From: Perna viridis
Taxonomy: Eukaryota
Direction of reading: 5' to 3'
DNA: 64,000 nucleotides
NCBI GenBank assembly: GCA_037379345.1
Contig: CM074524.1
Location: 6,855,635 to 6,919,634 of the forward strand
The notes under the pieces are model-generated. The model did no database searches. It was not told the DNA's origin and was given only the letters and a program-made list of their open reading frames with translations. This document shows, piece by piece, positions 15,101-55,010 of this stretch; the first letter of the stretch is position 1; each line of letters begins with the position of its first letter. The position numbers were made by a program, and so were the translations under genes.

Positions 15101-18100
15101 CCTGATATGTCTTCAACCTGTCCCTTGGCCACACATCCATCAAACTAACCTTGCCTGATATGTCTTCAACCTGTCCCTTGGCCACACATCCATTAAACAA
15201 ACCTTGCCTGACCTGTCTTCAACCTGTCATTTGGCCATACATCTATTTAACTTACCTTCCCTGACCTGTCACCAACCTGTCCTATGGCCATACATCTATT
15301 TCATATACCTTCCCTGACTTGTTCCCAACATGACCTTTGGCCATACATCCGTTTTAACTAATTTTGCCTGACCTGTCTCCAGCCTGTCCTTTGGCTACAC
15401 ATCCATTAAACTAACTTTGTCTGATCTGTTGCCAACCTGTCCTATGGCCACACATCTGTTAGACTAACCTTGCCTGACCTGTCGCAAACCTGTGCTTTTG
15501 CCATACATCTATTTAACATACCTTTCCTGATATGTCTTCAACCTGTCATTTAGCCATACATCTATTTAACTTACCTTCCCTGACCTGTCCCCAACCTGTC
15601 CTTTGGCCACACATCCATTAAACTAACCTTGCTTGATATGTCTTCAACCTGTCATTTGGCCATACATCTACTTAACTTACCTTCCCTGACCTGTCCCCAA
15701 CCTGTCCTTTGGCCACACATCCATTAAACTGTCCTTGCCTGATATGTCTTCAACCTGTCATTTGGCCATACATCTATTTAACTTACCTTCCCTGACCTGT
15801 CCCCAACCTGTCCTTTGGCAACACATCCATTGACTAACAAATTATTTCCCTTTACTTTGGTTGAACTGTAGGTCAAGTCTATGCCACTGAAAATTAAGCA
15901 CACCAAAATTACAGTTTGTTCTACTGTGCACATTAAAAAATAGATGGTAAATGAATATTGGCACTTCAAAACAGTAATAGTTCATAATTTTATACATTTT
16001 AGAAGGCGATTAATATATGACTTCCTCAAAAATACATATCTACATTCATAAGAACTCTAGTTACATAAATGTATAATGTAGACTGAAAGAGGATCATATG
16101 TTTATAGGGTTTAACTGTGCCATGTATCACCTCGAAAGCCACATACCATTGGCAGAATTTCATATGGATCAGTACTTAATTCCATGTTTGAATTCTAGTA
16201 ATTCCATGTTTGAATTCTAGAAGTTTTACCTAGTTTCTAGAACAGGAGTGAAGCTATCTACAGGTTTGGCAGAATTCCCAAATTCATCTTGAAACTCTAG
16301 GGGAATCTGGAAAGGTACTCCAACTCTAAACGGTCCATCTAACATCCCTACTGCAAACTTCTTAGGATCACTCTCTACAATAATATCATTTGGAAAAAAA
16401 TGGGAGTTCAATTATTAGAAGTAGAATGCAGAAAATCTTGGAAATTCTATAACACAGAAATAGCCTTAAACAGATCAGACATGAATTTACAAATCAACAA
16501 ATTAAGCAGAAATTGACAGAATGGGAAGTAAACAGAAGGAAAAAAGAGAAACATAAAATTGGGATCTGAATTTGGTTTTAAAGCAGAAGAAAATAAAATC
16601 TAAGCCGATAACAAGTTAGACCAATTGATATCTAGACCTGCATTGCACTGCAGCTGCGATTTATCTTGCTGAGAAAAATATGATCAAGAAAAATTTATGG
16701 ATGGATATACAGAACTACAGAACATAATTCCCGTAAAAATGGAGAATCCAAATTTTCCTATTACAGTGAACCTTCTCCAAACCAGCCACTACAGGGACAA
16801 GAGGAAATGGCCCGTTTATAGGGGTGGCCCGTTTTGTGAAAAATAGCAATGCATTCTTGTATCCATTAACGTATTCCAAAAAACTACACTTTGTCAGTTT
16901 GTTGGTCAAGACATGTTTAATGCAAATTCAGAACTTTGGGCCTTTTATTAAATTTCAAAGCTTGCATCATTTGTAAATGATTTGATTTTACAAACGGTAC
17001 TGCCGACATAACAATGTTCACGCTTCTGAAAGAATGTGTATTAAAGATCAAAGGGCTATTTTAGTAAATAAACATTTGTATTATTTTTGTAAATTCCTTT
17101 AGTCTACTGTCCCCTTCAATCTCAATCTGTTCACTGATGAAATGCCACCCGGTCAGTGAATTATTAATTATGTAATATTACATAATCATTTACAGTTTTG
17201 TTGATACATATATTATAGGTAAATAACCGGGCAGCCGGAATTGAGGTTGTTTTTACATAATATGTAACTAAAACTGTGAAAAACCAGCTGATGTACGGTT
17301 TTAAGGGGTGGCTGGTCTATTGAAGACAATACACACAGGTTATAAGGTATATTGGCCGGGACTTTTGAAAACGGTTGGTTTGAAGGGTAGACTGGTAGAC
17401 CTGTTTTCTGAGGGTCCGGTTTAGAGAAGTTTCACTATATTATGCACAATTACATATGGTGTTCTTGCTAAATAATGAGTTTTGGGAATTCTGTCAAGTT
17501 GTTTCAGAGGAGTTGCAATGACAAGCTGATGTTTCATTATGTTACAGACATATGGGCAGACAGACGGATGGAATGAGTGCTCTTACTCCTGGACCTGCTT
17601 CCACCTTTGGCAAAGCAGGTAAAATGGGACTTAAGAAGATGACAGGTTTCAGTTTTTTATGCTAGATTTTGACACATTCCACTGTATTCTTACAGTGTTG
17701 GGTTTTGACACGTTCCACTGTATTCTTACAGTGTTGGGTTTTGACATATTCCACTGTATTTTTAGTTTTACTGACCTGTTACAGTAAATCTTATTTTGTG
17801 TGATGGAAGTTCCTTCCCTGAGTAGACTGTATTACCACTCTCATTCAGGACAACTTGTAAATGTAGTGTGTGGGCACCAAGGTTACGAATGTTCTCTGTA
17901 AACAAAATTTTTAAAAATACATGTAAGACCTACATTTTTATGGCAATTCCAATTACTGAAATACATATATTGATACAAATCGTAATTTGTCCACAATATC
18001 TTAATATGTATTGTTTGTGTTTCTGGTGTGCCGTTGCAGCCATGAATGTCACAATTTTCACCATAATGGTGTGCCAACCAGCACACAACTATTGATCAAT

Positions 18101-21100
18101 TGCAATTATACTTATATCAGAAAGTATTATTCCAACACTTCATCTTAGTGTAAACCGGGTTAATCGGTAATTCATCAGCATTGCACTTGAAGGTACAAAA
18201 AAATCAGGTCTGCTATATACGAACTGTCTATAATTACACTTTCACATCACATTTTAAGAAATATAAACATGAAGTTGCATGTGCAAATCCCTAAACATAC
18301 AATAATTTGATATCTGAAAATTGCTTACAACATATGCCCCATCTATATGAAGGTACACACCAAATTTGAAATCAATCCATCTATTGGGAGCCAAGATAAT
18401 TGCAACACAAATTTGGATGGACAGAGTGAAGGATGGACAAGGTCATTCCAATATACCAACCACTCACTGTGTGGGAGTATAACTAATGCCATACTTACCC
18501 ATTTTCCTAAACCAGTAACCCCAATTTTTACTGAATTGACTTATATGTGATACCATCACCTCATCTCTTGAAGGTCCTGTAAAAAAATGAAATCCTAAAA
18601 AATCGTATACAACCAGAAATACTGATCAATTTACATTCTGATAATTCACTTAGTATTAAGAGTTGCAGAATCTAGAATTCTTACTTCCTGTTACTTGAAT
18701 GAAGTTTACCCATGGGAAAATATTGCAGGTACATGTAGAATTTGTTGGTGGAAATATCATTTTTCTTGCCCAACTTTCCAGTCACATCAAAGGAAGAAAC
18801 TTCCCAATATTTTTGAATACCGACTTAAGTACCCCAAGAATCTTGTTAAGTATTTATTCCACAATTTATTTTGTTTTTAATTTCGCTACAAAGTAAAATT
18901 CAAGAATGACAAAATTGATGTTGGTGCTTGCTTAAGGACTTCAAATAATTCAACATACCTGAGTGTTAATCATTTTTTATGTAAAATTTAGAAATATGAA
19001 AACGTATCACTGTCTAAAAGGTTGCTAACACTTCATCTTTTATCTGATACACGAAGGTTTTATTTCTTACCATGCCAAATGATTTTCAGTTCAACTAACA
19101 ATCTCTTGGATGAAGTAGCATTTCCAGGAAGTTTACTGATTGTCTCCCCTTTCTTGTTTGCTATCTCTAACTTTATTGCACCTGCAAAGAAGGGTAGTAA
19201 CAAAATTGTTGAACTGACAAAGTCTAGGCAATAGTCAAAGGGAAAGTCTGTAAAACAGATGACAATATCAGGTTGTAAACCAATAAGTCAGAGACCACCG
19301 CAATAATCCTGACTTGTTTCATTTCAGTTTTAAAACAGAAAAGGTATTGCAAATTCTGAACTTAATGCAGTTTTGCTATTTTAATCAACAATGCTATTAC
19401 ACTGTAACAGTCTTTCCAAAGGTTCAGTTTTTTTTTTCAGGACATTCGATCCAGTGACGACATACTATTTTTAGGACAGAACTAAGTTTTATCGTCCATT
19501 TAGACCTAAATCAAGAATGACTAATATTGGAAATTTTCTGAACTTCCGGTCTGGCATTCCGTATTTTTTTACCAGTCCTTTCACATTTTTTACCGCTGAT
19601 ATCCGATGGTCCAACGAACCTTCAGAAAGACTGTTGTAAAACTCGTTACCAAAGGGACATATGAACACATACTATGAGGAAAAGGGACCTAACGACTCAG
19701 CTTCAAAAAAAAAAACAATGAACCAACTACGTAACTACTAAACTGGCAGTAAAATTGATAATGAAGTCTTTTTATTCCTTTTATTCAAGAATATGAAATT
19801 GTCAGATGAGCTAAGAATTGCAGAAAGCCCAAAATGATTCAATCAGTGAAGCTTCAGTGGCTGAATTCACAAAATTTTGAGTGTAAAACTAGTAAGTTAT
19901 GATGTCACAATACTATTTTTGACCCTCATGAATTTTTGTGAAATACATGTAGACCACTGTTTTACTATTACAAGTAATAATATGTATCTTTCCCCTAGAT
20001 AAAAAATTTTCTGTTATACATGTTGAATAAATAAAAAACAGATACAAAATATACATACATGTAAATACTAAGCAAATAAGGGCAAAAATACAGAAATACA
20101 TGTACAGGGATAAAAATTAGCAGTCACCCAGTAGCCACGCTAGATTTTGAACTGGGCTACCATACTTTTTGAGTAAAATTTAGTTGAACGTATGGAATAT
20201 ATTCAACAAAAATATGGTCTGGGCTACCAGCGTGTATTTTCTAATTTTTACTCCTGATGTATCAAAAGAATACACACCAATAGTTTCTCCAGCAGCTCTG
20301 CTTTCATTCTGTTTCACTTCATGTCCTTCTGGCCATGATACACACAAGACAGAAGGTAATCTGAAAAAGAACAATCAATTTTAAAGCAACATGAATTAGC
20401 TCCTGTTGTTGTGCTAGGTATATCACCGATCTTACAGGAAGTTGATACCAAAATCCTTTACAATGCATGACCCATCTATAAGAAACCAAACACCAAATTT
20501 GAAACAAATCCATCAATTGGGAGATCTTTGTGTTGAAAATTTTCTCAATCATTCCATATCATGACAAAGTCCCACAAAATAGGAAGTTGAAATGGGACAG
20601 TAACCAAATCACTTACAACACATGCCCCATCTATATAAAGCCTCACACTAAATTTTAAATCAATCTATCCAGAGCAAGTCACATTAACTGCCATGAAATT
20701 CAGATGGACGGAATGACGAATATGGTGATCACAATACACAACACACTTTTTAACTGGGTGTTTAATCTATACAACAGGAACTTGCCACATCAATTTAATT
20801 TGTAGATTCTCATCCACCAGCAACTAAAACAATGGGGTGGCACCGAGGATTTTATTTTTTATTTTTCCAAGATATGTAAAACATTATTTCCGCTAAGAAA
20901 CTTGTTAATGTGTACTTTTGGTTATGTTTGTGCCCCACCAAGGCTTTATTGCTTTAATTCCCCTTATAATGCAACTAACAATGAAAACCATCCTGAGATC
21001 TGACCAAAAATATTAAGATATTCTGTAAACATATACGTTACCAGTTTTTTTACCGGAAGTCTATAGTAATGTGTAGAAGTAGAGTCATGACGGATATGGA

Positions 21101-40812: not shown

Positions 40813-42408
40813 AAGCTTCATGATGAAAAAGATAATTTTTTTCTCAAAAGTCTAATAAATAAGATAATAAATTTAATGCCATGAATATTCAAAATAAGAT
40901 CACTAGTGCCAAAAACTGAGTAAGATTTAACTTGTACACTGAACAAGTTCCACACACTCGTTTAATCTAGGCATTCTTGGCATTTGTGATCTACAATATT
41001 TTGGTAATTCACTCTTTCCAATTAATTATCCTATTAAGAAACCGTTTTATTATCTTTTATTTGGTCTTACCATTATTTTTGCAATGTACTTAAATTCTTA
41101 AGTTTTGAATTTTGCTACTCAACATTTTAGCCAGAAAAAGATCACCCTATCGTGTGCCAGTTTTTAATTGTTTATATTTTTAAGTTAAATCCTTTGTTCA
41201 ACTATCCAGTCCTTTTCTCTGGCTTACTCTTAGATAACATGATTTGCACATCTAACTGTCCAAGTCAAAGAAGATTTTCAATTTCCTGAAGTTTTCATCA
41301 TTTTACTTTTCATGAACAACTGTTGAGATGAATATGAAGTTTCAAGCAGTTGCAGCACTTCCTACTAAATTGAATTTCCAGCTCTTAGAACAGATCGAGT
41401 TTTTAGTGTTCAGTGTGATCTTGTTTATGAAATAACCTGCATTACAGTAAAATAGCGCAAGTTTTTGATCATGTTCATCCCTTATGTCTTTTTAACAGTG
41501 CCATAGCAAGAACTTGAATGTATTACATTACCAGAGTATTGTTTTTCTTTTTTTTCTGATTTATCTCTTGTTGACATCTATCAAAGAAATGTTCATCAGA
41601 GGATTAATATTCATTTTATTATTGGTTCTATTTCATCCCTTTTTTTCTTTTCCATTTTAACCCTAGCCCCAAGATTAAGGATTTGATCCCATTTTAAATT
41701 TACCAACATAACCCATTATGAAATAAGCAACATGGATTCCACTGAAGTCAACAGAACACAAGGATTTAAGCTTCTTGAATTACAAGTTCTCTTGGTTTGT
41801 TTTGTTCTTGATTTGAAATGAGTTTTTCAGTTGTTGAGCTAGGTTTACTCCAAGGAAGTTGACATCAGACTGCAACAAAAGCCACATATGAAGCCACATA
41901 CCAAATTTGAAATCAATCAAGTTGGGATAAATGAGACAAAATTTGGATGGACAAATAAGGTGTTTCCAATGTACCACCAATGAATTGAGATGAGGTATAA
42001 AATAGCATTGGTAAATTATCAAACCCTAACAGTGTACACGTTTTGTGTGTCAGCTTCGCAATCGTTCGCATATATATAACAACCGACTGTGTATCATAAC
42101 CTTGTTAACTCGTTAATGCCACAATTCACAACCCACTTTAACAACAAACCATACTAAAACAAGTTGCAGAGAAAACTGACAAAAATTACGAGTTGAAACT
42201 GTATGGTCAAAATATAATGATGTTGAACAGGAAGTTGATGTCGCTTTAGTAGTCTGATATCAGATCCCACAATATGGCATACCTCTACATCTATAAAATC
42301 GAGTTGCAACTTGCCAGAGAAATATCTGGGGGGTTTATGACAAACAGACAAGTGAGCATAATGACCACTACATTTGATAGAAATAATAAAACAGATTTTA
42401 AGATTTTT

Positions 42409-42414
42409 TTTATT
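42409..42414 (-). terminator. RPS8 polyadenylation signal
   Basis: AATAAA on the minus strand about 27 nt after the stop codon. Confidence 0.65.
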
Positions 42415-42440
42415 TGTCCTGCCTTTCCTCACATCACAGT

Positions 42441-42550
42441 TTATTTCCCTTTCTTGGTCTTGATCTTCCTCAAGTAGAATTCCAATTCTTTTCCCTCAAG
42501 GATATATCCGTCAGCACGTCCACATTTACCAGGTCGAGAAGCTAATTTGG
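42441..42550 (-). CDS. RPS8: RPS8 exon 6 CDS
   Basis: [35 protein letters not shown]. Confidence 0.96.
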
Positions 42551-45500
42551 CTGTAATAGAGAAAAAGACATTCAATATTATTGTGTACATACAATACTAG
42601 GTTTTAAAACAACATGAAATTTTCTCAATGCAAGTCTTCTGAATAGATAGATTCAAAATTTCTTCCAAACCTTAAAGAATATTTCCATTCACTCATGGGA
42701 CAAAATGCTTTGCATTCAGAATATATTAAAAGAAAATTTGTACTAAACATTTGGCCAAAATCTTGTTCTCAAGATGTCTGCCAGTGCTTCAACTAGTGAT
42801 GATCCTAAATTTTCCATTTTGAAAGTATATTTAAACTACTGTCAGCATAGTAAAAAATTAGTCAGGAACCATGGATTGAAACTTTTCAGAAAGTTATAAA
42901 GTTACTCAGAAATAATAATCATCACTGTCACTTAGGACTCGAAGCGAGCTGGGATTATAATTTACATCATTGTAACTTGTCAGATGAATATTAATACATG
43001 TAAAATGTCACTTCTAGTATTCCTACTAAAAAAATCTACACTTAGAATTATCTATCTTAATATAAATCAAATTGGTTCTGATGATCTAAATATTTTTTTC
43101 CCTGTTTATTAGAATCCAGGTCTAGGATAACTGGGAAGAGTGCAAATCACCACAAGTGCTGTACGTAGTTAAATACTGCTGACTAAAAGGAACTAAATGG
43201 TAAAGAAGCCCAAAAGTGGAAAATTAAAATTAAGGATCAGATATATAGGTCCCCAAAAAAATTAAGCACAATGGCAGAAAAGGAGTCTTCAGAACAAAAA
43301 TTTGAAAGATTTCCTAACATAACAACATACGAAATGTCAGACTAAAATTATAGGGACCATGCAGCTTCCCGACTGCTATAACAGGGGTTATGAAGCTCTC
43401 TTTCTTCAGGAGCATTTTAACTGAAAACACACCCAGAGGCAACTACCTTCAAAAACATTCTAATCAACCAAAATCATAACACTACAGAGGTAAATGTGTC
43501 AATGTCGACAATTCAAAATAACCAAATATTCCGTCAAGAACTATTTATGAGAGTATGTTACTCAGAAATAATAATCATCACTGTCACTTTGGACTCGAAG
43601 CGAGCTGGGATTATAATTTACATCATTGTAACACAGGATGCTTAGTACTGGAAATTTGCATGGATTCGTAAATTCTACAGGCAAACAATTAAGAACTCTA
43701 TACAAGATTGGATTATAATTTACATCATGATTTCAGTTAACAATTCGAACATCAAAGATTCTAAATTTATAGTGAAGTTCCAGTAAATGACTGTTATATG
43801 TAAGCACATTTTTTTTAATTTTCAACAGTGATCAAATTTAAGGGGAAATACTTGCTAATTGTAAGCTGAAATTCAATTTTGCTAGTAAAAATTATTTCTA
43901 CCTGCTAAAATTTGCTAGTAGAATTCTATATGTCATATTGATAAAGTCCAAAAATAACCCAAAAAAAACTTAAAAATTTAGCGAGTGTAAATTTTCTATT
44001 GTAGCAAGATAACAAAAGAAATCTGGAGACCACACGTTTATCTGTCAATCTTTCAAATAAATTTCTTCAAATGATTTGCAAAAAAAAATTCTCAGTGTAA
44101 CTATGACAACCATATCACTGAAAACAGTTACGCTGCTGTCAAAACGACGTCACAGCACTGATTTCTGGGTCAGAGTTGTATCATCATCGTAAAAGCAGCA
44201 TATTTTAAGTAATCCGTGGTTTACCTTTATTGTCCTTTTTTTTTTCATTTTTGTGACTAAAACATCGATTTATTGTTTGACAAAAGAATACATCTATTAA
44301 CAAAACATTATTTGAAAGATTCTTTTCGAGAGTTATCCAAAGAGTGGACAGAGTAAGACAATCTGATAGCAGTTTTCTAATTTACAAGTCTGTCCCAACC
44401 TGTCAGTCGCAAAACATAATCGACAGAATTTCGGGAAGAACAAAAATCCTCAGTAGATCATTTTTAATTAAATACCTTCAATGAACAGAAAATAAAATTG
44501 AAAATCTGTCAACTTTACAAATGCACCAAAGTCAGTTGCTAAATGTAATTAGGATACTGAAATCTACTAGCTTGTATTTTGTTAAGACTTCATCAAATCT
44601 TCCAGCAAATAAATTTACACATTAAATTGCTTATATTTATGTACTAGGTATATCCTCACTCATACAGAAGTTGATAACTGAGAGCAACCAAAGCCAATTA
44701 CAACGAATGCCCCATCTACCAAATTTGAAATAAACCCTTCTGTTGGAAGCAGAAACAGGGACTGAGCTCAGACAGACGGACAGAATCAAAGACACATACA
44801 AGACAATTAAAAAACACCATCAACTCATTGAGTGGGGTATAATATAGTGGACAATCATTGTTTGACCTCTACACATATTTGTGGGGTACACCTCAGGTAA
44901 AATATCATTTCCTGCAGATTTCAGATTGGTGATCAATGTCTTTTTCAAACTTCAAAAAAAATTCATTTTAAGCATCATCAGGGTAACTATGACAACCTAG
45001 TCATTGAAAGCAGTTACGCTGCTGTCAGAACGACGTTACAGCACTACTTTCTGGGTCGAAATTTTCATCATCACTTGATGCTTAAAGAACTATTGGTTCA
45101 GACATCTTGAAGGAAATTTATTTTATGAGTATTATGAATTCTTAAGCCGGTACAGACATATCATGTAAAAATCTTTAAAATCATTTTATACCAGGGTTAA
45201 TCTTAAGAGATTCCCCTTTAAACAAATGCATTTCATTGTGCGTACACATAGATTCAGACACAAAGCTATCAAAATAAAATATCTACTAGTATTCACATAC
45301 CTAAAACACGACCTGCACTGAATTCATCATCAAGAGCTTGATCAACTTTAGCAGTCTTCTGTCTTTCTTCATATTTTCTTTTTAACCTCTTGGAACCTTT
45401 TTCTAATTTGTTTAAAACAGTTTCTTCAGCTTCACTCTGGAAAAGAGAAATAAAATGTTACCTTGACCGAGTTTATTACTGGATGCTCAAAAAAAAAAAC

Positions 45501-46703
45501 ATAGCTAGATACCTAATCAGAGGTAGAACTCTGGAAAGTATACTGTAAAAATACTTTAATTCATGGATACTAATTTTCGTGGATTAGGGAGGAAACACAA
45601 ATTCGTGGTTTTGAAGTTTTCTACATGTATATAAACATCAATGGAAATCTCCTTTTCGTTGGGAACCAAATTTCTTATTTTGGTCTACTCACAAAATTCA
45701 AGAAAATTGGTACCCCACGAAAAATAGTACTTCCATATGAACACTACAGTTGATTCAACTCTGAGTTCTGATTGAAAAGAATTTTTTTTACACAGCAAGT
45801 CGAAGTAATCAGACATAAAATCTGTCATAACACAGTTATTTTTCATTGTCTAAAATTAAAAATCTAAACCTTATTTTACTTAACATGCTCATTATTTGTT
45901 GAAATAAATCACATTAAAAGAGGAAAAATTTGAAGACAGGCAAATTATATAATCTCAATAGACTGTAAGATTCGGTAAAGAAAAAAATTCCAAGAAATCT
46001 GTTTTCATTGTTTAATTTAAGATATAAAATTAGACCAACTAGATATCCTCACAAAAACCTGATCGAAGAAGTTGCCTCAGAAATTGTTCAATGCATCAAG
46101 ACTCAGCCGAAAGATGGTGATAGATGTTTCATTCATCATTGACACTTCTTACAAGGATTCAAATGAAAATCACTCCAAATTAATAAAAAACAATTATGTT
46201 TGGTTACATTGACAGCAAATGCTATACATCAATTTCTATGAAAAAAGTCGATGACTTCATTAAATGTCCAAAATAAAATTCCGAATTTTTGAGAGAGGTT
46301 AGCTGGATTTGCAGTCTCTTAACTGGTTCATAATAACCATATACTTGCCTGTGAAGTATATGTTTCCTTACCTTATTCTTGAGAAGTTGTAACAATGTTC
46401 ATTTCTATTTTTTTTAGATGCATCATAAAGGTCTTGAAATTCACAGGTTAGTAACAACAAGCATTCTGAGTGTATTGCAAAACAATACATAGTCCCCTAC
46501 CCATGTTTATATCACTGACCCAAATACTACCTTGGATCATCAAGTATAAATGACAAACTGAGGAAACGTCCTTGATTTTGAACAGAAGAAGGGATATGGA
46601 CAAAGACACGAAAGATGTTCAAATCCATTTAACAGATACTGATTTGCAAAGTTTTATGCATCGAAAATAGGACAGATTAGGTTTCAAATAACTATTGACC
46701 TGT

Positions 46704-46736
<33 letters not shown>

Positions 46737-49700
46737 AACACAATATCTGAAGTCTAAAACTGGAAGTTAGCAACTTTGGAAAAAATCAGAAAAGTAGAAC
46801 GAAATGTAAACTTGATCAGTAACTCATCAGGTTAGAGTCAAGTAATCAGAAAATCAGCTCAATATCTGCAAGCGTTTGGAAAAAAGGTGCTGAAAACTTA
46901 AACTTAAAATTTTGGTAAATTTTCAAAGTTCAAAGGCCATAACTCTGACAAAAATCAGTGAAACCTAACGAAACGCAAACTTGATCTGTAACACATCAAG
47001 GTTGACTCACATACCAAAAATCAGCTTAATACCTGCAAGCGTTATGAAAAAAGTGCGGAAATCTTCAATTTTTTTCCAGACTGACGAGCGGACAGACAGA
47101 GTGCAAATCTAAAGTCCCCTTCGGCTAAAGCCCGTAGGTCACTTACAATAAGAAATGCCAGAAAAATAGAAGACAACCTCTACCACTGTATGATTCAACC
47201 CTACCCTGTGGATAACTTTAAATAGACATTTAGTTACATTACAAGTAAACATTTCATTGCTAATTTTATCTAGCTTTTCCAATGACCCAAGGACCTTCTG
47301 AATGACTGACATGGTACCATCAGAAATAATAAATACATCAAGACTCAGCCGAAAGATGCTGATTAATGTTAATTCATCATAGGTACATTTGTACTTTTTG
47401 TAGTCAAATGTTCAACACTATTTGAGTTTGAACAGAATTATTATATCAAGAACCTCCTCACCGCTTACATTCAAACCTGATTTTACAAGGTCAACAAACA
47501 AAGCAGAAATTGGCGAAATCAATAGTAAATATACATTTAAAAAAAAAGAGTCATAACGGTAAAATCTGGATTTGAAAAAGCAGAAGAAAATCAGACTGTA
47601 TATTTGGAAAAGTCTTCAAAAAATGTGACGGCCAGCCAGCCAGACCTATCTTTACTGAACTGTTTTGATTGCCATTAAAAAAAAAAGCACAAATACAAAG
47701 AAAGTGCCTTCCCCCATTCCTCATATGTTTTACTGAAACAGACTTAAGTTATACATGTATTTTAACTTATCCTTGAATATTTCCTATGACAAAGGTATTT
47801 CAACATTGATGCATACTAATAGGTCAATATTTGATACTAATTGATGACCCCATGAAAGTATTGTGCTTTTAATTATCTTACAAATTTGGTCCCAAATAGC
47901 AATTTCTGTATTATTTAGGCATTTGTTTTTAAGGGTTTTCTTCAAAACAAATATGTGTGGTAAAGCAGGTAGGTCGATCAAATTTCTGGCAATGATTTTT
48001 GGAAAGAAGTAGACAAAAATTAGAGAGGCTATTTTACTCTTGTAACATATAGCTGCATTCCTGGCCTGAGAAAAGATTGGTGATAAAAAAGTACCATCAG
48101 GTTTATAAGATACATCAAGACTCAGTCGAAAGATGGTGATTGATGTTAATTCATCACAGGTACTGATTATAATATTGGAATTCAACAGGAAGCCATTGAA
48201 AGTCTACAACTCCAGTGTTCTAGGATTCCTATTTCCCCGTTACCCAGGGCAAGTGAAAATTGGGTCAGGGAAAGTTAGGTACTTAAATACACTTTCCCGT
48301 GGCAAGTTGAAAACTTCATTTGCTGTAAGGGTTTGTTTAGTTAGGAAAGCAGTCATTGACTGTGGGAAAGTTGCTTTTATATGAATTTTTCCCGAGGAAA
48401 CATCAATTTCTGAAAAATCCTAGAACACTGAACACTACATCATGTTTCCTTATTTCACTAACAAACAGGCATATACCAGAGGCAACAAAATATAATGACT
48501 GTTAAATGGTAAGGCTAAAAAAATGCATGTCTGTTTGCAGCAGCCCAACCAACCACTCAAAACCCCAGACCTGGATTTCTTTCTCTTTAAATTCCAGAAA
48601 AAAATCTTTGACAGTCCAATCCAAATTATAATGGGGTATCTCAATCAAGTGAAGCCGATCATGCCATTATCATTGATAATAAAAAAAAAAAAAACATTCT
48701 GACCTACTGACCTGTATATTTTTCCCCAGCAACCGAAAACAGACATCAAATCTGGTTACACAAGAAACAAGTACTATCTTTAAAAAAAAAGACAGCCGAC
48801 GCAGTAAAATTTCGTTCTTTTTTACTACTAAGTTTCTACATTTCTTTCAACAAAATAACACATGGCACGCAATAATAAAGTTTTTTTCTAATGCAATTCC
48901 AAATTTTCTATACAGATTTTTTGAATGCCACTAAGTTGTCAGTATTTGGCCAATCAGGAAAATAACTGTGATCAGGTGACTTGTGTTTCCATATAGAAGA
49001 GCGTCCTTAAGGTCAAAGGGTAAAAAGCAAAGCACTACCAACTGCGTCGGAAAAATTGGCAAAATTAAATGCTGATACACTGTAAAATGAGAATATGGAT
49101 GCGGAATATCAATATGACCTTTTAGAAGTAACTCTAGATTAAGTTTTAAGTCCTACAGGCCAAAGGTTACATACCAATTTGACATTCTTCTTTCTACCTA
49201 AAGGTTTAGCGTAGTGAGCTTCATACCACTGTCTGAATGGAGTAGCGTCAACTGATACAATTGCACTTTTGACAAGAGTTTTGGTTCTCACAAGCTCGTT
49301 GTTGCTAGCATTGTAAACAACATCAATGATACGAGTCTTCTTGGCAATGCCTGAAAAAAATTGCACAATTGGTCAAACATTTACAGTATATCTAATAAAC
49401 TATTCCAAAGTCTTACAAAACATAAACTGCAAGATTCACTTAAGAGACTACCATAGATTTCTGCTACCCATGAGTAAGTTTGCCCTGAAAATTAACTTTC
49501 CCACAACAGAAATCAATGCAAAATTTACAAATTTTGTACCTTCCACAGATTTAATTACGCTTGCCATAGGAAAACATAAATTTATTCTAGAGTCCTGTTT
49601 TGAAATCACTCAGAAATAATAATCTTCAATGTCTTCTGACTCAAAGCGAGCTGGGATTATGCTTTACATCATAGTGACTCACAAACTGAAAAAATCAACT

Positions 49701-52700
49701 CAAATTAAAAATAACCATATAATACCCTTGATTGGGATAAGAAGGAGCCCATGTGCAATTAATCATGTTTCAGCTGAAAATGTCCCATTTTAAAAATAAA
49801 TATTTTCTAAGAATGTTAAAGATAGCCTATGACTTTCTGAAGAACACTAGAAATGGCCCATTTTCAAATTTTTAATCCAAATCACAGTAGTACACCAGGT
49901 TCTCATACATCCTTGAAACCCGACAACTTAACCATTTTAATCTGAGCATCAACAATATTTATAAAGATTGATTGATTGTTGGGGTTTAATGCCCGAGCAG
50001 CAATATTTCAGCTATATTCTGACAATATATTAATATAGAGTTCAAATCCTACAACGTATACTTTTAATTTAACTGTCACTTGAAAATATACATTAGTTTG
50101 TACGGCAAAAATCTCAAGTTTTCTAACAAATGGATTTTAATGAGGATCGCAAATCTGAATATAAGGGATAAATTCCCATACATATTCTAGTGTATATTTC
50201 TGTATCAAAGTACCATCATAGTGCAATTGGTCATGCCACTCAGAAATAATAATCATCACCGTCACATTGGACTCGAAGCGAGCTGGGATTATAATTTACA
50301 TCATTGTGACATGATAGCACTTGGAAATAACAAGTACATTAGTGTAGATTTTAGAAAATTTTAGTTTTCATAGGAAATTGCAAAATAAAAATGAATTTTC
50401 CCACAGTCAAAAGTCTGCTTTCTGAACTTTAACAAATCCTTTCATAAATTCAAGTTTACTTTTTTCCAAAGGAAATATTGTTCCAAACCGAAGTTTCACT
50501 TGCCACAGGCGAAGGAAACATGGAATGCTAAAATAATGCAAGTGTATAACATACAAGTACTAAATCAATCAGTTTCTCAAAATCTTCTCATGGCACCTTT
50601 AGCAGGGATAAAGATTAACTTCTTAAGGCCAGTAACCACCTGGGCTACTACTATAAAATCAATTAGCCCAGAAAAAATGTTGGTAACCCAATCTTTTTCT
50701 GACAAAATTTTGGTACATAAAAATACTTGTTTGAGGGTATGAACTATTTGTTCATTGTTGAAACCCTCATGCAACATCAAAATGCAGAACAGGAATAAAA
50801 GCCCTGTTCCTTGATAATTTTTATTTCTTTAACTGTATTGTGTGATTTGTTGTCACACACATTCACTCATTCACTCCATAGCCTCCCTATTTATATGCAT
50901 CATGGAAAACCCTAAAATGTGCAATTAAAGTTAAAAATGTGCTTTGGAAAAAATATCTCTTTCAATGAATTAAAATTGTACCAGTTCATATAATTTCAAA
51001 ATTTTAATACATGAAACAGTAGACTCTTTGAATATTCTAGAGATGAATTTTGTTCAGGTTCTGAACAAATTAATCTCTAGAACATTCAAACAGTCTTGCA
51101 AAAACTGAATCCTCCTTTTAATCACTATCACATTCTGACACATTTTATGAAATACTGGATGCAGAAATTAATAAGCAATTCTAAAGATACCAACATCGGT
51201 TATGAACGATTTCCGTATTATTAGAACTGGTTACCAATTAGATTTAACTAGGGACACTACGTTTCCGATCAAATGGTATCCAGTTAAAACTCAGACCACA
51301 ACTTTTGTTCACAATAATTTTTTTTTTTGCAATTCGCCACCTGGGCTTCTAAAATAGAAAAAATGGTTGCCAATGCCCATTTCAGGTTGCCATTGGCGAG
51401 AGGGCAATCGTTAATCATTTCCCGTTTAGAAACACATTGTGAGAAAGGGCAGCTTTAATAAGACACATTAAAATTGTTGCTATTACAAAAATGTTTCACT
51501 ATTCATGGTGCATCAAAAAATGATGTTTGGACTAGGGTCTTCCCCTAAATGAAAATCATCTTTCCACTTGCCTCAAGAATTTGACTGAACAGTCCAGGAG
51601 CTTTAAACATTGCATAAAACAGAAATTAAAATGCCTACATGACCTAAGAAATCAAATTACAGATGAAAAAATTTCCCTTCAAATTGCACATCAACTACCA
51701 AAGACAGTGTGTCAGGCTATTGTCATTTAATCATTGGAAGACAAACTCTATACCCTGAACATAATCATTTTATGATACAGAGTAATCCATCTATACCCGA
51801 CATGTATAATGCAAGAAATTTGTGAAGCTCTTCAGATATGCTAAGTTTTATTAACTTCTGAGAAATCAGAAATGTAAGTTCATAATTGGTCCTATACTTT
51901 ATAAGAGAATCCTTTGCCCACATGATCAGTTCTTTATTTCTAAAAAATCTCCTTAGATGTGACCAGTTTTAACCATGATGAAAAAACTAAAAAGTCACTC
52001 AGAAATAATAATCTTCAATGTCGTTTGACTCAAAGCGAGCTGGGATTATGCTTTACATCATAGTGACTCACAAACTGTAAAAATCATTTAAATATCTAAT
52101 AACCACATAAAATAATTTGATTTGTTTTAATTTGTTGTTTTAAATTAGAACATGATGAAAAGGATCAGTCAACCTCAACCTATAACTCCTAAATGAATTA
52201 AGATTTGCACGTAAGGAAATGGTTTAATATGATGGCCTAGACTGCTTCCAATAGAAATTCTTGAAGTTGTTGATTATGGTTACATGAAGTTGACATTACC
52301 ATTTTCTAACCTACATAAACATGACAGCAGGAAAATGTATGTTCCAGTCTAATCCATAATGTAAGATAGAGGATACAGGTGGGAAAATTGAATTCTTATC
52401 CCCAGTTTAAAGAAGTATAACGACTCGGTATATACTGCACTGAAGAATTCAGTAGTTTGCACTTTTATCAATTTGTTAATTGGTCCAGTTCAGAAAAAAA
52501 AAAACCAACAATGAACTCTTCACAAGTGCATTTAGTATTATAATAATATTATCTAGAAATAGGATTGAAAATTAAACTGAAGTAACCAGACCAAATTCAA
52601 ATGGTATCAAGTATAGATGTCCTTGCATAGTGCTACCTTAACAAATGTTATTGCAAATCATACACACATATTTTTATAATTTTAATATCATGTATCTATG

Positions 52701-54973
52701 AATCCAAATGCAAAATTTTTCATGATCAACACAGAAATAAAACTCTGATAGATCTTGAACCATCAGATATAAACAAATACATCATCAACTCAGCCGAAAG
52801 ATGGTGATTAGTATTTAATCATCATTGGTTCACATTACTATGAAGTAGAGACTGAATAATAATAAGACCCAGGGCTTGACATTAAAATTTTAACCAACTT
52901 GTGCCTTTGGGCAAGTGCATGACAGATTTGATATTTTTTTGGGGAGAGTTTTATGTTTAAAGTAATAATATTTTTTAGTATTATTAATTTTTTCATTGAA
53001 AAAATATGCTTTTAAGCTTTATTATAGCCAAAATTTACTTCGAATGTCACCGTCAAACTCTCAACAGAGATCGAAATGGAAATGCTATCTGATTGGTTCT
53101 TTTTCATAGCGGAGCTTTCCGATTGGTAGTTTTTTTATATAACACATGTACCTGTGAAATGGGAAAACCAGATTAAATTGAAAATAGCAGTGCAAGTTGC
53201 CAAAGATTCCCGAAGAATAAATCGTTTATAAAAAGAAATTTTCTGAAGATATTTCGAGATAAATATCATTTCTTAAAACTTTTTAAGTTCAAACACCTGG
53301 ATTTTTTTTACTTTCCTGATTGGGCTAGCACTGAATGACTTTCACCTGTCTGAACGGAATTTTCACTTGACCCAGGCAGTCAGACAACCGTTATTGTCAA
53401 GCACTGAGACCATGACAAATATTTCACGCATTTGAGGATGAGAACAGTTCAGTAATCTTATAGACCAGTGTTACGGACCATGCTTTGTATCAGACTAGCC
53501 TAATCAAAGATATGAATACAGCGCTTAGATCAAATGGTAAAAAGAGATAATATATGACCTGATATTACCATGTATATGAAAATAAAATGGCAGTAATTGA
53601 GGAATTTCATAACTTCATTTGAAGATTTTAGATAACAATACCTACCTTCTGAGCCCCAAGCAAAGTTGCCTTGATCCAGTCGTAGAGCTCTATATTTCTT
53701 GTTACCACCCATGGTTCTCACTGTGTGAATTCTCTGAGGTCCCAACTACAATAAATAAAAGTTTACCACTACATTCCTAAGACACCAAGTAATAGTGTAA
53801 TAGTGTGTGCAACGTAATCCTGCACTTAAAATTTATGTCACACAATTTAACAGGTCGGGAACAACCCCTGAAATAAGGGTAACTGACAAATCGATTATCC
53901 ATTCTGATTTTGAGTACCTCTCATATGGCGACTATTTACCAATGCAATAATTTCAGGGGTTATTCCTAATCTGTTTGTTAGTTTATGTATCTTACATATT
54001 TGGTTTAAGGTTCCCCATATTAATGCACTAACTTTTTTCCTACTCCTTACTTTTTCAGTGTTATGGAGCAATGCACTCAAATTTCTGAAGATTTCCATAC
54101 ACAGGGCTGTAACAAAATACAAAATTTGAACCATCAGATATAAAAATAATACATCATCAATTCAGCCGAAAGATGGTGATTTGTATTTAATCATCATCAG
54201 TTCAAATTATATTTTGCAAGCCAGAAACATAAACAAGACAATGAGTTTTGTGCATAGAAATAAATATATTTGCCATCAATTCACGAAATAAAAGTAACTG
54301 AATATGTTGTGCTTAAATAACGAATGCCGAAATTCTAAAACTGTACTTTTGTGTTGGCAGCAGGTCTTCCCAACTCAAACTTTCTCTTCTTTCTCATCTG
54401 GGTCATACGCCCACCAGTCTTCCTCCTCTTGTGCCATTTATCTCGTGAGATACCTGCAAGAATATTCACATATTAAGAATCAAAAGACTTTAGGTCAGAA
54501 TTTTACAGTTAAGGCTTTTAAAAATCTATATGTCAAAATGAACAAATACTTTTCCCTAAAATACAAGCAATATTCAAAAATTCAGAATATTGCGAATTAC
54601 TGTCTGTAAGTGTAAACAGACTTGTGAAAATCGATTTCAATTCGACAATACACAATTGTCAAAATCTGAACATCGCAATATCGCTTGCCAATTAACACGA
54701 GTGTTACGGATATGCTAGCGCTGTTGACAATTTTATAATCGCGTTTCATTAAGAAAGAGGTCTATGTTTGTAAATGCATCATGTTGATTGGTAATGTATA
54801 TGCGGTACTTTAAGTGTTTTCAAGCTTATCCTTTGGCAAACCGTACTAAAAGACCTTTAATACGGTACGATGGAAATAAATTAAACTTAATGTATATCAA
54901 AATCTTATTTCAGTTGCCAAACTGATATGATGATGAAGGATTTTATTTTGAGAAAATTTCATATCGTACCCAT
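42441..54973 (-). CDS. RPS8: 40S ribosomal protein S8 (eS8), complete, 6 exons, 210 aa
   Basis: Exons 54970-54973, 54347-54453, 53646-53745, 49175-49350, 45301-45436, 42441-42550 give [16 protein letters not shown]...[11 protein letters not shown]...[16 protein letters not shown]...[17 protein letters not shown]...[22 protein letters not shown]...KKGK*. Confidence 0.97.
42900..42977 (-). ncRNA. Box C/D snoRNA, SNORD29/snR71-like, copy A1 (RPS8 intron 5)
   Basis: C box ATGATGT, guide TAATCCCAGCTCGC + D' TCGA, C' GTGATGA, D CTGA, stem AGTTAC/GTAACT; guide complementary to 28S GUGAGCUGGG. Confidence 0.82.
43556..43633 (-). ncRNA. Box C/D snoRNA, SNORD29-like, copy A2 (intron 5)
   Basis: Near-identical to A1; stem TGTTAC/GTAACA. 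Confidence 0.82.
44088..44192 (-). ncRNA. SNORD46: Box C/D snoRNA, SNORD46 (U46/U40, snR63)-like, copy C1 (intron 5)
   Basis: C box ATGATGA; 3' end TTGTCATAGTTACACTGA as in human U46; complementary to 28S helix 69 GUAACUAUGAC; central hairpin. Confidence 0.85.
44967..45086 (-). ncRNA. SNORD46: Box C/D snoRNA, SNORD46-like, copy C2 (intron 5)
   Basis: GTGATGA ... TTGTCATAGTTACC-CTGA; 11-bp external stem TTTAAGCATCA/TGATGCTTAAA. Confidence 0.85.
45301..45436 (-). CDS. RPS8: RPS8 exon 5
   Basis: [45 protein letters not shown]. Confidence 0.94.
46072..46144 (-). ncRNA. Box C/D snoRNA, SNORD51 (U51, snR39/snR59)-like, copy B1 (intron 4)
   Basis: ATGATGA ... ATCACCATCTTTCGG-CTGA (D') ... TGATGC ... 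CTGA; guide complementary to 28S CCGAAAGAUGGUGA. Confidence 0.85.
46455..47150 (+). mobile_element. Helentron/pearl-like element with satellite-related core (RPS8 intron 4)
   Basis: Ends match 6247-6555; core AATATCTGCAAGCGTT related to the 2948-3992 units. Confidence 0.65.
47314..47386 (-). ncRNA. Box C/D snoRNA, SNORD51-like, copy B2 (intron 4)
   Basis: Same layout; stem GTACC/GGTAC; one distal guide substitution (CAGCATC). Confidence 0.8.
48090..48164 (-). ncRNA. Box C/D snoRNA, SNORD51-like, copy B3 (intron 4)
   Basis: GTGATGA...TCACCATCTTTCGA-CTGA...CTGA; stem AGTACC/GGTACT. Confidence 0.82.
48213..48430. mobile_element. MITE with 15-bp TIR CAGTGTTCTAGGATT
   Basis: Perfect inverted termini; flanks AACTC/AACAC look like a degenerate 5-bp TSD. 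Confidence 0.65.
49175..49350 (-). CDS. RPS8: RPS8 exon 4
   Basis: [46 protein letters not shown]. Confidence 0.96.
49606..49677 (-). ncRNA. Box C/D snoRNA, SNORD29-like, copy A3 (intron 3)
   Basis: ATGATGT...TAATCCCAGCTCGCT-TTGA...TTGAAGA...CTGA; stem TCAC/GTGA. Confidence 0.8.
50231..50314 (-). ncRNA. Box C/D snoRNA, SNORD29-like, copy A4 (intron 3)
   Basis: A1/A2 subtype; 9-bp stem with one non-Watson-Crick position. Confidence 0.82.
51993..52068 (-). ncRNA. Box C/D snoRNA, SNORD29-like, copy A5 (intron 3)
   Basis: A3 subtype; stem AGTCAC/GTGACT. Confidence 0.82.
52756..52832 (-). ncRNA. Box C/D snoRNA, SNORD51-like, copy B4 (intron 3)
   Basis: ATGATGA...ATCACCATCTTTCGG-CTGA...TGATGA...CTGA; stem TGAACCA/TGGTTCA. 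Confidence 0.85.
52870..53406. mobile_element. Non-autonomous DNA transposon, TIR CAG(G/T)GCTTGACA, 5-bp TSD AGACC
   Basis: TIRs at 52870-52881 and 53395-53406; AGACC at 52865-52869 and 53407-53411. Confidence 0.72.
53646..53745 (-). CDS. RPS8: RPS8 exon 3
   Basis: [33 protein letters not shown]. Confidence 0.96.
54123..54208 (-). ncRNA. Box C/D snoRNA, SNORD51-like, copy B5 (intron 2)
   Basis: Same guide and boxes; external stem AATTTGAAC/GTTCAAATT. Confidence 0.85.
54347..54453 (-). CDS. RPS8: RPS8 exon 2
   Basis: [35 protein letters not shown]. Confidence 0.96.
54970..54973 (-). CDS. RPS8: RPS8 exon 1 CDS (ATGG)
   Basis: ATG G|gtacga downstream of a pyrimidine-rich start; phase fits exon 2. 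Confidence 0.85.
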
Positions 54974-54979
54974 GATGAT

Positions 54980-55010
54980 GGAGAAACGGAAAAGACCTAA
55001 TACCGGAAGT
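54980..55010 (-). promoter_or_regulatory. RPS8 TCT initiator / 5'TOP tract with adjacent ETS(GABP)-type site
   Basis: Minus strand TCTTTTCCGTTTCTCC about 20 nt upstream of ATG (predicted start at C 54994); CCGGAAGT at 55003-55010 and again at 55260-55267; typical of animal ribosomal protein promoters. Confidence 0.75.

What the first reader, a model, noticed from the sequence alone, without database searches (positions are those of the whole stretch)
42900..54208. Twelve box C/D snoRNAs packed as multi-copy, mixed-family clusters inside four RPS8 introns
Seen: 5 SNORD29-like, 5 SNORD51-like and 2 SNORD46-like copies, all sense to RPS8. They number 1 in intron 2, 4 in intron 3, 3 in intron 4 and 4 in intron 5. 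Boxes and guides are conserved while terminal stems differ between copies yet stay complementary, which points to selection on several copies. Known: animal intronic snoRNAs are normally one per intron and are released by debranching and exonucleolytic trimming; polycistronic snoRNAs in yeast and plants need RNase III-type cleavage. Inference: this animal would need an endonucleolytic step, recursive splicing or hidden non-coding exons to free the internal copies, or else it accumulates long intronic RNAs capped by a snoRNP at each end (sno-lncRNA-like). This is the best candidate for an undescribed system here.
Basis: partly seen in the sequence, partly recalled or inferred. Interest (0 to 1): 0.85.

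Follow-up and report, generated by a model that had tools for sequence, protein, structure and literature searches.

The report
Multi-copy snoRNA clusters in mussel RPS8 introns
A mussel ribosomal-protein gene (RPS8) carries twelve small RNA guides for ribosomal RNA methylation, up to four per intron, and the same crowded layout occurs in other molluscs, so it is real and conserved but belongs to a gene organisation already known from flies and rice.

Summary
RPS8 lies on the minus strand. Its introns 2 to 5 hold 1, 4, 3 and 4 sense-strand box C/D snoRNAs: 5 SNORD51-like, 5 SNORD29/snoR69Y-like and 2 SNORD46-like. Eleven are canonical. One, 46_b, has lost its terminal stem.

- **Function:** each family has a guide that fits a conserved site in this genome's own 28S rRNA. 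In this assembly the three families were found only at this locus.
- **Selection:** copies resemble each other only inside the snoRNA body (0.81 identity). Flanks are at background (0.56-0.58 against 0.55). Terminal stems co-vary.
- **Splicing:** RNA contigs from four runs show introns 4 and 5 removed whole, with no hidden exons. Intronic depth peaks are dispersed repeats. No recursive-splice motif exists.
- **Conservation:** four Mytilus assemblies keep the same plan (intron 3: 29-like x3-6; intron 4: 51-like x3-5; intron 5: 46-46-29x2-3). An ark clam, a venerid clam (24 units) and a whelk also have multi-copy RPS8 introns.

This is a conserved intronic snoRNA gene cluster, a kind described in rice and Drosophila, here new for molluscs. 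How internal copies are freed is still inference; I favour endonucleolytic cuts in the spacers followed by trimming. Earlier unchecked notes of this scan report similar crowded introns elsewhere in this genome (CHD7, HUWE1, FAM199X).

The parts
54970..54994 (-). RPS8 exon 1 (TOP-like CTTTTCC start, ATG plus one G, then GT donor); start site inferred
54347..54453 (-). RPS8 exon 2
53746..54346 (-). intron 2 (601 nt), holds 51_a
54123..54208 (-). 51_a, SNORD51-like box C/D snoRNA, 11-bp terminal stem, 14-bp D' guide to 28S A1019
53646..53745 (-). RPS8 exon 3
52756..52832 (-). 51_b, SNORD51-like (68.6 bits)
51992..52069 (-). 29_a, SNORD29/snoR69Y-like; D' guide of 10 bp to 28S A3242
50231..50314 (-). 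29_b, SNORD29/snoR69Y-like, 9-bp terminal stem
49603..49680 (-). 29_c, SNORD29/snoR69Y-like; 253 nt upstream of the 3' splice site
49175..49350 (-). RPS8 exon 4
   Evidence: its last bases appear as the loose end at 45437
45437..49174 (-). intron 4 (3738 nt), holds 51_c, 51_d, 51_e; removed whole in RNA
48090..48164 (-). 51_c, SNORD51-like (best Rfam match Me28S-Am982, same clan)
47311..47388 (-). 51_d, SNORD51-like; one C-to-G change inside the guide
46067..46149 (-). 51_e, SNORD51-like; terminal stem with an internal mismatch
45301..45436 (-). RPS8 exon 5
42551..45300 (-). intron 5 (2750 nt), holds 46_a, 46_b, 29_d, 29_e; the GT..AG joint 45301/42550 is seen in four RNA runs
44967..45086 (-). 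46_a, SNORD46-like; 11-bp terminal stem; D guide of 11 bp to 28S A2543 and D' guide of 11 bp (2 G-U) to A3147
44092..44190 (-). 46_b, SNORD46-like with boxes and guides kept but no terminal stem; doubtful or decaying copy
43554..43635 (-). 29_d, SNORD29/snoR69Y-like
42899..42978 (-). 29_e, SNORD29/snoR69Y-like; 349 nt upstream of the 3' splice site
42380..42550 (-). RPS8 exon 6 (stop TAA at 42441-42443; 3' end approximate)

Best explanation
This is a conserved intronic snoRNA gene cluster. RPS8, a very highly expressed TOP-type ribosomal-protein gene, doubles as the only detected source in this genome of three families of box C/D guides. Their predicted targets are 2'-O-methylation sites on 28S rRNA:
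- A1019 (SNORD51-like).
- A3242 (SNORD29/snoR69Y-like).
- A2543 and probably A3147 (SNORD46-like).

Shown here:
- Each unit is self-contained, with C, D', C' and D boxes, a guide and its own 5-11 bp terminal stem.
- Introns 4 and 5 leave the mRNA in one piece.
- No unit sits at the 65-85 nt distance from the 3' splice site that vertebrate splicing-coupled assembly uses. The nearest are 253-632 nt away.
- Units, not spacers, are conserved between copies and between mussel genera.

Inferred:
- snoRNP core proteins assemble on each terminal-stem/K-turn unit independently of its position, on the nascent or excised intron.
- The 0.46-1.7 kb spacers are then opened by one or more endonucleolytic cuts at non-conserved places.
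- 5'-3' and 3'-5' exonucleases trim to the protected snoRNP ends, as in plant, yeast and fly clusters.
- Copy number turns over by local duplication and loss, while selection keeps several working copies per intron.
For: - **Identity and placement:**
- **Guides against this genome's own rDNA:** 14, 10 and 11 bp duplexes, with the fifth position upstream of D'/D on a conserved A.
- **Only locus in the assembly for all three families:**
- **Body against flank identity:** 0.81 for bodies, 0.56-0.58 for flanks, background 0.55 +/- 0.04.
- **Terminal-stem covariation:** 5 copies are 100% paired with 2 compensated pairs. Over 34 distinct copies from five genomes, 4 of 7 pairs are compensated and the covariation score is above all 500 shuffles.
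- **Whole-intron splicing:** the joint 42550/45301 has depth 929-18795 in four runs, and exon-4 sequence is the loose end at 45437 in all four. No cryptic-exon joints were seen.
- **Cross-species layout:** conserved in four Mytilus assemblies. Multi-copy RPS8 introns also occur in Tegillarca, Ruditapes (24 sense units, 1 antisense) and Babylonia.
- **What is conserved between the window gene and the Mytilus genes:** only exons and snoRNAs, so there are no conserved spacer elements or exons.
- **Decayed copies exist:** 46_b here and L015:5793. Unselected copies do rot.
- **Precedent for the organisation and for endonucleolytic release:** PMC2780460 and PMC10557570.
Against: - No read-level small-RNA data. 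The runs available were contigs of what look like mRNA libraries, so neither mature snoRNAs, cleavage ends nor per-copy expression were seen.
- No cleavage signal was found. Flanks show no extra pairing beyond the terminal stem.
- The one strong hairpin between copies is a dispersed repeat.
- U-tracts next to snoRNA ends looked weakly enriched in the window (9 of 24, P about 0.03). They are not enriched over 104 units in eight genes (about 7% against 12% at random). A XendoU-type U-specific signal is therefore not supported, although the genome has at least 3 XendoU-family loci.
- Gene conversion could contribute to body similarity.
Confidence: 0.6

Rival explanations
1. Exonuclease-only, stochastic release. 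On each excised intron only one unit, or only some, assembles a snoRNP. Exonucleases run through the naked units and stop at the protected one. Extra copies raise the chance that an intron yields something, and no endonuclease is needed.
For: - All units lie far from the splice-site position that favours assembly in vertebrates.
- RPS8 is expressed at thousands-fold the intron depth, so low yield per intron would suffice.
- No cleavage signal was found.
Against: - Whenever two units on one molecule assemble, the spacer is trapped.
- Introns mixing two families (intron 3: 51+29; intron 5: 46+29) would make the families compete.
- Arrays of about 19 units in one Ruditapes intron are hard to see as insurance alone.
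Confidence: 0.15
2. The main stable products are long intronic RNAs capped by a snoRNP at each end (sno-lncRNA-like), with functions of their own.
For: Two snoRNAs in one intron produce such RNAs in human cells (PMC11028025, PMC4233243). Spacers of 0.46-1.7 kb are in that size range.
Against: - Spacer sequence is not conserved at all between this mussel and Mytilus or between paralogous spacers.
- Intronic contig depth is 0-40 against thousands for exons, and its peaks are dispersed repeats.
- The three guide families have no other source in the genome, so free snoRNPs must be made.
- The libraries may have been poly(A)-selected, so absence of such RNAs is weak evidence.
Confidence: 0.08
3. 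Minor alternative or recursive splicing events place a splice site between copies, so that each copy is at times alone in a sub-intron. The resulting mRNAs are destroyed by NMD and so are rare.
For: - This is known for human multi-snoRNA hosts such as SNORD49A/B (PMC4233243).
- Donor-like motifs exist at 46371 and 44223.
- Contigs drop rare variants.
Against: - No such joints in four runs from three studies.
- Contigs read through 46371 unspliced.
- No YAG|GTRAG ratchet site in any of the four introns.
- No conserved spacer block that could be an exon.
Confidence: 0.07
4. Most copies are silent relics kept similar by gene conversion, and only one copy per intron is functional.
For: - Within this species the 29-like copies group with each other rather than with Mytilus copies, as conversion or recent duplication would give.
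- 46_b is visibly decaying.
Against: - Similarity stops exactly at the snoRNA borders.
- Terminal stems differ between copies yet are compensated, which conversion would erase.
- Intron-specific subfamilies are shared among Mytilus assemblies.
- The multi-copy state persists across mollusc orders.
Confidence: 0.07
5. Each unit is transcribed from its own promoter inside the intron.
For: Some nematode and plant intronic snoRNAs are.
Against: - All 12 units here, and 104 of about 110 in eight genes, are sense to the host.
- Upstream 80 nt are at background similarity, so there is no shared promoter element.
- Units have terminal stems typical of processed rather than capped snoRNAs.
Confidence: 0.03

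Closest known systems
Intronic snoRNA gene clusters of Drosophila melanogaster and rice (Huang et al. 2004/2005; Liang et al. 2002, as cited in PMC2780460 and PMC2246290)
   Same: Several snoRNA genes lie in one intron of a protein-coding host, all sense, often as paralogous copies, and often in ribosomal-protein genes. They must be released from one excised intron.
   Different: A different phylum. Box C/D families are mixed in one intron. Spacers are long (0.46-1.7 kb), with no sequence conservation. The layout is conserved across mussel genera, and the same host gene is used across mollusc classes. I could not read the primary papers, so finer comparisons rest on citing papers and on memory.
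Human RPS8 snoRNA host locus (SNORD46, SNORD38A and others)
   Same: Same host gene and the same SNORD46-type guide (GUCAUAGUUAC before box D). Human SNORD46 lies in an RPS8 intron (PMC5025248), and SNORD46 and SNORD38A are annotated at RPS8 (PMC6418160). The Ruditapes RPS8 array has a guide to 28S GGTGTCCTAAG, which I recall as the SNORD38 site.
   Different: [quoted passage not shown] From memory, human RPS8 has one snoRNA per intron and SNORD51 sits in EEF1B2. In the mussel, SNORD29-like and SNORD51-like copies sit in RPS8 and are multi-copy.
Human sno-lncRNAs and alternatively spliced two-snoRNA introns (PMC11028025; SNORD49A/B in PMC4233243)
   Same: More than one box C/D snoRNA in a single intron, which raises the same problem for exonucleolytic trimming.
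   Different: No snoRNA-ended long RNA and no alternative junction was seen here. There are up to 4 units per intron here, and about 19 in a clam, rather than 2.
Polycistronic snoRNA clusters of yeast and plants cut by RNase III (Rnt1) between units (PMC10557570)
   Same: Several snoRNAs on one precursor, which need internal cleavage plus trimming.
   Different: Those are mostly independent transcription units with short spacers and defined stem-loop cleavage sites. Here the precursor is a spliced intron and no conserved spacer hairpin exists.

Membership tests
box C/D snoRNA | C box (RUGAUGA) near the 5' end and D box (CUGA) near the 3' end, brought together by a terminal stem | tested here: met
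   10 of 12 pass a strict scan with a 5-11 bp stem. 51_e passes with an internal mismatch. 46_b has the boxes but no stem. The 29-like copies have AUGAUGU.
box C/D snoRNA | Guide of 10 or more nt upstream of D or D', complementary to rRNA, with the fifth position on the modified nucleotide | tested here: met
   Against this genome's own 28S: 14 bp (51-like), 10 bp including 1 G-U (29-like), 11 bp (46-like D) and 11 bp including 2 G-U (46-like D').
box C/D snoRNA | Accumulates as a 60-120 nt RNA bound by fibrillarin, Nop56, Nop58 and Snu13, and the target is 2'-O-methylated | not testable with these tools
   Only contigs of long-RNA libraries were available.
SNORD51 (RF00280, clan CL00054) | Score at or above the Rfam gathering threshold (50 bits) | tested here: met
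   68.6, 62.7 and 52.2 bits for three copies. 48.2 bits for 51_e. 51_c matches clan member Me28S-Am982 at 38.9 of 49 bits.
SNORD29 / snoR69Y (clan CL00051) | Score at or above the Rfam gathering threshold (45 bits for RF01198) | tested here: not met
   22.6-28.4 bits. I therefore call them SNORD29-like by guide and target only. The target is the A in CGUGA*GCUGGG of 28S, which I recall as the site of human SNORD29 and yeast snR71.
SNORD46 (RF00218) | Score at or above the Rfam gathering threshold (40 bits) | tested here: not met
   19.6 and 18.2 bits. The D guide and the host gene match human SNORD46 (PMC5025248), so these are SNORD46-like by guide and synteny.
intronic snoRNA gene cluster | Two or more snoRNA genes in one intron, same strand as the host, with no exon between them | tested here: met
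   Introns 4 and 5 are removed whole in four RNA runs. For intron 3 this rests on the gene model only.
sno-lncRNA | Stable RNA with a snoRNA at each end spanning the spacer | tested here: inconclusive
   No enrichment of spacers was seen in contigs. Contig depth is uninformative, and the libraries may exclude non-polyadenylated RNA.
RNase III-processed polycistronic cluster | Conserved stem-loop cleavage sites between units | tested here: not met
   No conserved spacer element between species. Flank pairing is at background. The one hairpin, at 51023-51094, is a dispersed repeat.

The most novel reading that the evidence does not exclude
Molluscs as a phylum routinely pack many snoRNAs into single long introns: 12 in this RPS8 gene, about 13-17 detected per gene in Mytilus, and 24 in a clam with about 19 in one intron. 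On this reading they free the copies by a processing route not yet described in animals. That route would be signal-independent endonucleolytic opening of snoRNP-studded introns, or multi-snoRNP intronic RNAs as real intermediates or products.
Probability: 0.2. Interest if true: 0.7.

Novelty: new member of a known kind. Interest (0 to 1): 0.45.

Why it matters
The predominantly one-snoRNA-per-intron picture of animal genomes comes from vertebrates and a few model species. Here an entire, conserved set of rRNA-methylation guides depends on introns that hold three or four units each, far more in other molluscs, with long unconserved spacers.

That gives a natural system for asking how internal units are released from a spliced intron in an animal. 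It also lets one ask how copy number of guides is tuned by duplication and loss inside one host gene.

It shows too that the RPS8-SNORD46 linkage is shared by human and molluscs, so it probably predates their split. For annotation, it warns that mollusc gene models and snoRNA finders that assume one unit per intron will miss most copies.

Tried and rejected
- **Hairpin at 51023-51094** (z = -7.4, miRNA-like Rfam noise), tested as a Drosha/RNase III site between 29_a and 29_b. Rejected: it has at least 20 dispersed copies in the genome.
- **Intronic RNA depth peaks** at 45.56-45.71, 46.4-46.6 and 47.4-47.6 kb, tested as cryptic exons or stable intron RNAs. Rejected: each is a dispersed repeat with hundreds to thousands of first-look candidates. 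The two short blocks shared with L018 fall in one of these repeats.
The motifs exist, but no joint uses them and contigs run through 46371.
- **Recursive splicing.** No ratchet motif.
- **Low-depth non-canonical joints** (43893/43973, 46528/46772, 46889/47091). These were single contigs at depth 4-6, without splice-site dinucleotides on either strand. I read them as indel alleles.
- **U-tracts as XendoU-type signals.** Weak in the window, absent over 104 units.
- **Long external stems.** At background.
- **Metagenome scan with the 29-like core.** It gave three contigs (L004-L006) from other eukaryotes without RPS8 exons, so it was no use for synteny.
- **Short contigs with exon 4** (L007-L014). 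They gave only one flanking snoRNA each.
- **Tree of 29-like copies.** Too short to resolve orthology: 22 of 31 branches are open.
- **Papers.** Huang 2005 and Liang 2002 are not held.
- Exon 4 was searched alone by reference, and full-length relatives came from the database.
- **Housekeeping.** The window has no N runs.
Full report
**What is there**

The window has no gaps. Rfam finds box C/D matches only on the minus strand between 42.9 and 54.2 kb. There are five in the SNORD51 clan, five to snoR69Y (the SNORD29 clan) and two to SNORD46.

Stop-to-stop translation, splice-site reading and RNA joints give an RPS8 gene on the same strand:
- Exon 1 is about 54994-54970.
- Exon 2 is 54453-54347.
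- Exon 3 is 53745-53646.
- Exon 4 is 49350-49175.
- Exon 5 is 45436-45301.
- Exon 6 runs from 42550, with the stop at 42443-42441.

In gene order they are:
- Intron 2: 51_a.
- Intron 3: 51_b, 29_a, 29_b, 29_c.
- Intron 4: 51_c, 51_d, 51_e.
- Intron 5: 46_a, 46_b, 29_d, 29_e.

A motif scan that needs a C box, a D box 45-125 nt later and at least 5 paired flanking bases finds ten of them. It finds only one chance hit in the rest of the 64 kb on both strands. Shuffles give 0.3.

**Are they working genes?**

I took this genome's own rDNA and paired the guides against it:
- The SNORD51-like D' guide makes 14 perfect pairs with 28S, placing the fifth position on A1019. It makes 13 pairs in 51_c, and 10+3 around one mismatch in 51_d.
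- All five 29-like copies share one guide that makes 10 pairs on A3242, if D' is read as UYGA.
- Both 46-like copies make 11 perfect pairs on A2543 through the D guide.
- A second, D' guide of the 46-like copies makes 11 pairs (two G-U) on A3147. This D' guide is kept in every mollusc copy I aligned.

Searches of the whole 723-Mb assembly found all three families only at this locus. I used a covariance model for the 29-like family, the Rfam model for SNORD51 and DNA for the 46-like family. Only the best candidates are scored, so these counts are a floor.

**Signs of selection**

Self-comparison of the gene shows that copies match only over the snoRNA body. The one exception is the 29_a/29_c pair, which shares 42 nt upstream.

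Global identity averages 0.81 for bodies. It is 0.58 and 0.56 for the 80 nt on either side, which is the background for random intron pieces (0.55 +/- 0.04).

Terminal stems differ between copies but pair. In the five 29-like copies every one of 35 cells pairs and two positions change on both sides.

46_b is the exception. Its boxes and guides are intact, but no stem brings C and D together, and the predicted fold buries the C box. Both Mytilus counterparts keep a stem. I therefore count eleven sound copies and one doubtful copy.

**Splicing**

The four best RNA-type runs, from three studies, are contigs. They are clearly RNA: exon bins reach depths of thousands and intron bins 0-40.
- All four carry the joint 42550/45301 (GT..AG on the minus strand, skipping 2750 nt).
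- All four have exon-4 sequence as the loose end at the exon-5 acceptor (laid to 45437; exon 5 starts at 45436).
- So introns 5 and 4 are each removed in one piece.

No joint uses an intron-internal site. The three low-depth joints lack splice-site dinucleotides and look like indel alleles.

The bins with raised intronic depth are dispersed repeats. There is no YAG|GTRAG ratchet site in any of the four introns.

Contigs lose rare isoforms, so minor NMD-targeted forms are not excluded.

**Other molluscs**

Exon 4, searched alone by reference, led to fragmentary relatives. Through one of these I reached annotated full-length RPS8 proteins and their genes. The three models were run over these genes and the exons mapped.

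| Locus | Taxon | Intron 2 | Intron 3 | Intron 4 | Intron 5 |
|---|---|---|---|---|---|
| L015 | Mytilus assembly | none | 29x6 | 51x4 | 46-46-29x3 |
| L016 | Mytilus assembly | none | 29x6 | 51x5 | 46-46-29x3 |
| L017 | Mytilus assembly | none | 29x5, then 51 | 51x3 | 46-46-29x2 |
| L018 | Mytilus assembly | none | 29x3, then 51 | 51x3 | 46-46-29x3 |
| L020 | Tegillarca granosa | 51-51 | 51 | none | 46-46 |

The Mytilus rows match the plan of the window (intron 3: 51-29-29-29; intron 4: 51x3; intron 5: 46-46-29-29).

The generic scan finds more:
- Ruditapes philippinarum (L019) has 24 sense units and 1 antisense. About 19 are in intron 5, including some 13 copies of a 67-nt unit whose guide fits 28S GGTGTCCTAAG.
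- The whelk Babylonia areolata (L021) has 14 sense units. Eleven are copies of a 55-nt unit in a 605-bp tandem repeat.

Between the window gene and the Mytilus genes, nothing but exons and snoRNAs aligns.

Over 34 distinct 29-like copies from five genomes, the inner six stem pairs are 91-100% paired and four pairs show compensatory change. The covariation score exceeds all 500 shuffles and all slid controls.

A tree of these short sequences is mostly unresolved. It does show intron-specific groups shared by the Mytilus assemblies, while the window's copies group among themselves. That fits duplication, loss and perhaps conversion within lineages.

**How it probably works**

These points are shown:
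- The units are self-contained and selected.
- Introns 4 and 5 are excised whole.
- Spacers are free to vary.
- No unit lies at the short fixed distance from the 3' splice site that splicing-coupled assembly uses in vertebrates. That distance (65-85 nt) is from my knowledge of Hirose and Steitz. The nearest units here are 253-632 nt away.

From that I infer position-independent snoRNP assembly on each terminal-stem unit. Endonucleolytic opening of the spacers would follow, then exonucleolytic trimming. This is the route accepted for yeast and plant clusters and proposed for splicing-independent release in Xenopus (PMC10557570).

I found no cleavage signal:
- Flank pairing is at background.
- The only strong hairpin between units is a repeat.
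- A weak excess of U-tracts in the window disappears over 104 units.
- XendoU-family genes exist in the genome, but nothing ties them to this locus.

The rivals cannot be excluded without small-RNA and end-mapping data. They are stochastic single assembly, sno-lncRNA-type products, rare alternative splicing, silent copies and own promoters. Each fits the evidence less well, as set out in their entries.

**Comparison and novelty**

[quoted passage not shown] Human two-snoRNA introns give sno-lncRNAs or use alternative splicing (PMC11028025, PMC4233243).

The host link is old. Human SNORD46 lies in an RPS8 intron (PMC5025248), and SNORD46 and SNORD38A are annotated at RPS8. SNORD29 is annotated at the SNHG1 locus in human (PMC6418160).

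My paper search found no study dedicated to mollusc snoRNA organisation among the best-ranked papers.

I therefore file this as a new member of a known kind.

Earlier notes of this scan report the same habit at other genes of this genome: CHD7 with seven copies in one intron, plus HUWE1, FAM199X and U17+SNORA16. I did not check those.

Noticed in passing
window 51023-51094 (minus strand): Near-perfect 35-bp hairpin (z = -7.4) with weak miRNA-family matches. It is a dispersed palindromic repeat with at least 20 copies at 84-93% identity in the genome, probably a MITE.
   Followed up: yes
window 45560-45710, 46456-46620, 47470-47585: Three short interspersed repeats inside intron 4 (336 to over 3000 first-look candidates genome-wide). 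They account for the RNA depth peaks in the intron. Bins 43800-43999 and 48200-48399 also show raised depth. I suspect repeats there too but did not check their copy number.
   Followed up: partly
window, all five 29-like copies (for example 42906-42925): The stretch before box D (GAUUAUUAUUU) is invariant in all five copies but has no convincing rRNA target. The best matches are 18S position 868 (12 bp with 4 G-U) and a 10-bp A/U-only match 38 nt past the 28S 3' end. A second function or target is possible.
   Followed up: partly
window 45020-45036 and 44136-44152; A8 alignment: The SNORD46-like D' guide (GUCGUU then YUGA) is invariant across 13 mollusc copies and fits 28S A3147. This predicts a second methylation site for the family.
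   Followed up: partly
L019 (Ruditapes philippinarum RPS8) 10056-19386: One 9.3-kb intron holds about 19 canonical box C/D units. About 13 are copies of a 67-nt unit with a guide to 28S GGTGTCCTAAG (SNORD38-type by my memory), and others belong to at least two further families.
   Followed up: partly
L021 (Babylonia areolata RPS8) 5500-12900: A 605-bp tandem repeat, about 12 units long, inside intron 3. Each unit carries a 55-nt box C/D unit and a fragment resembling part of exon 4. It could be a real array or an assembly artefact.
   Followed up: no
L016 17578-19803 and L017 18656-20107: A hAT/ZBED-type transposase gene (741 and 483 aa) lies antisense inside Mytilus RPS8 intron 4, which helps explain why those introns are much longer.
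   Followed up: no
L005 (metagenome contig VSKX01095676.1) 300-3400: Tandem cluster of snoR69Y-like, SNORD82-like and Z157-like units repeated about three times, with no RPS8 exons. It is a polycistronic cluster from some other eukaryote that shares the 22-nt core of the 29-like family.
   Followed up: no
window 42934: In run X1 a contig reads T for A here. On the RNA strand this makes 29_e the same as 29_d at this spacer position. It could be an allele, a conversion or a contig chimera.
   Followed up: no
It is not part of this finding and I did not examine it.
   Followed up: no
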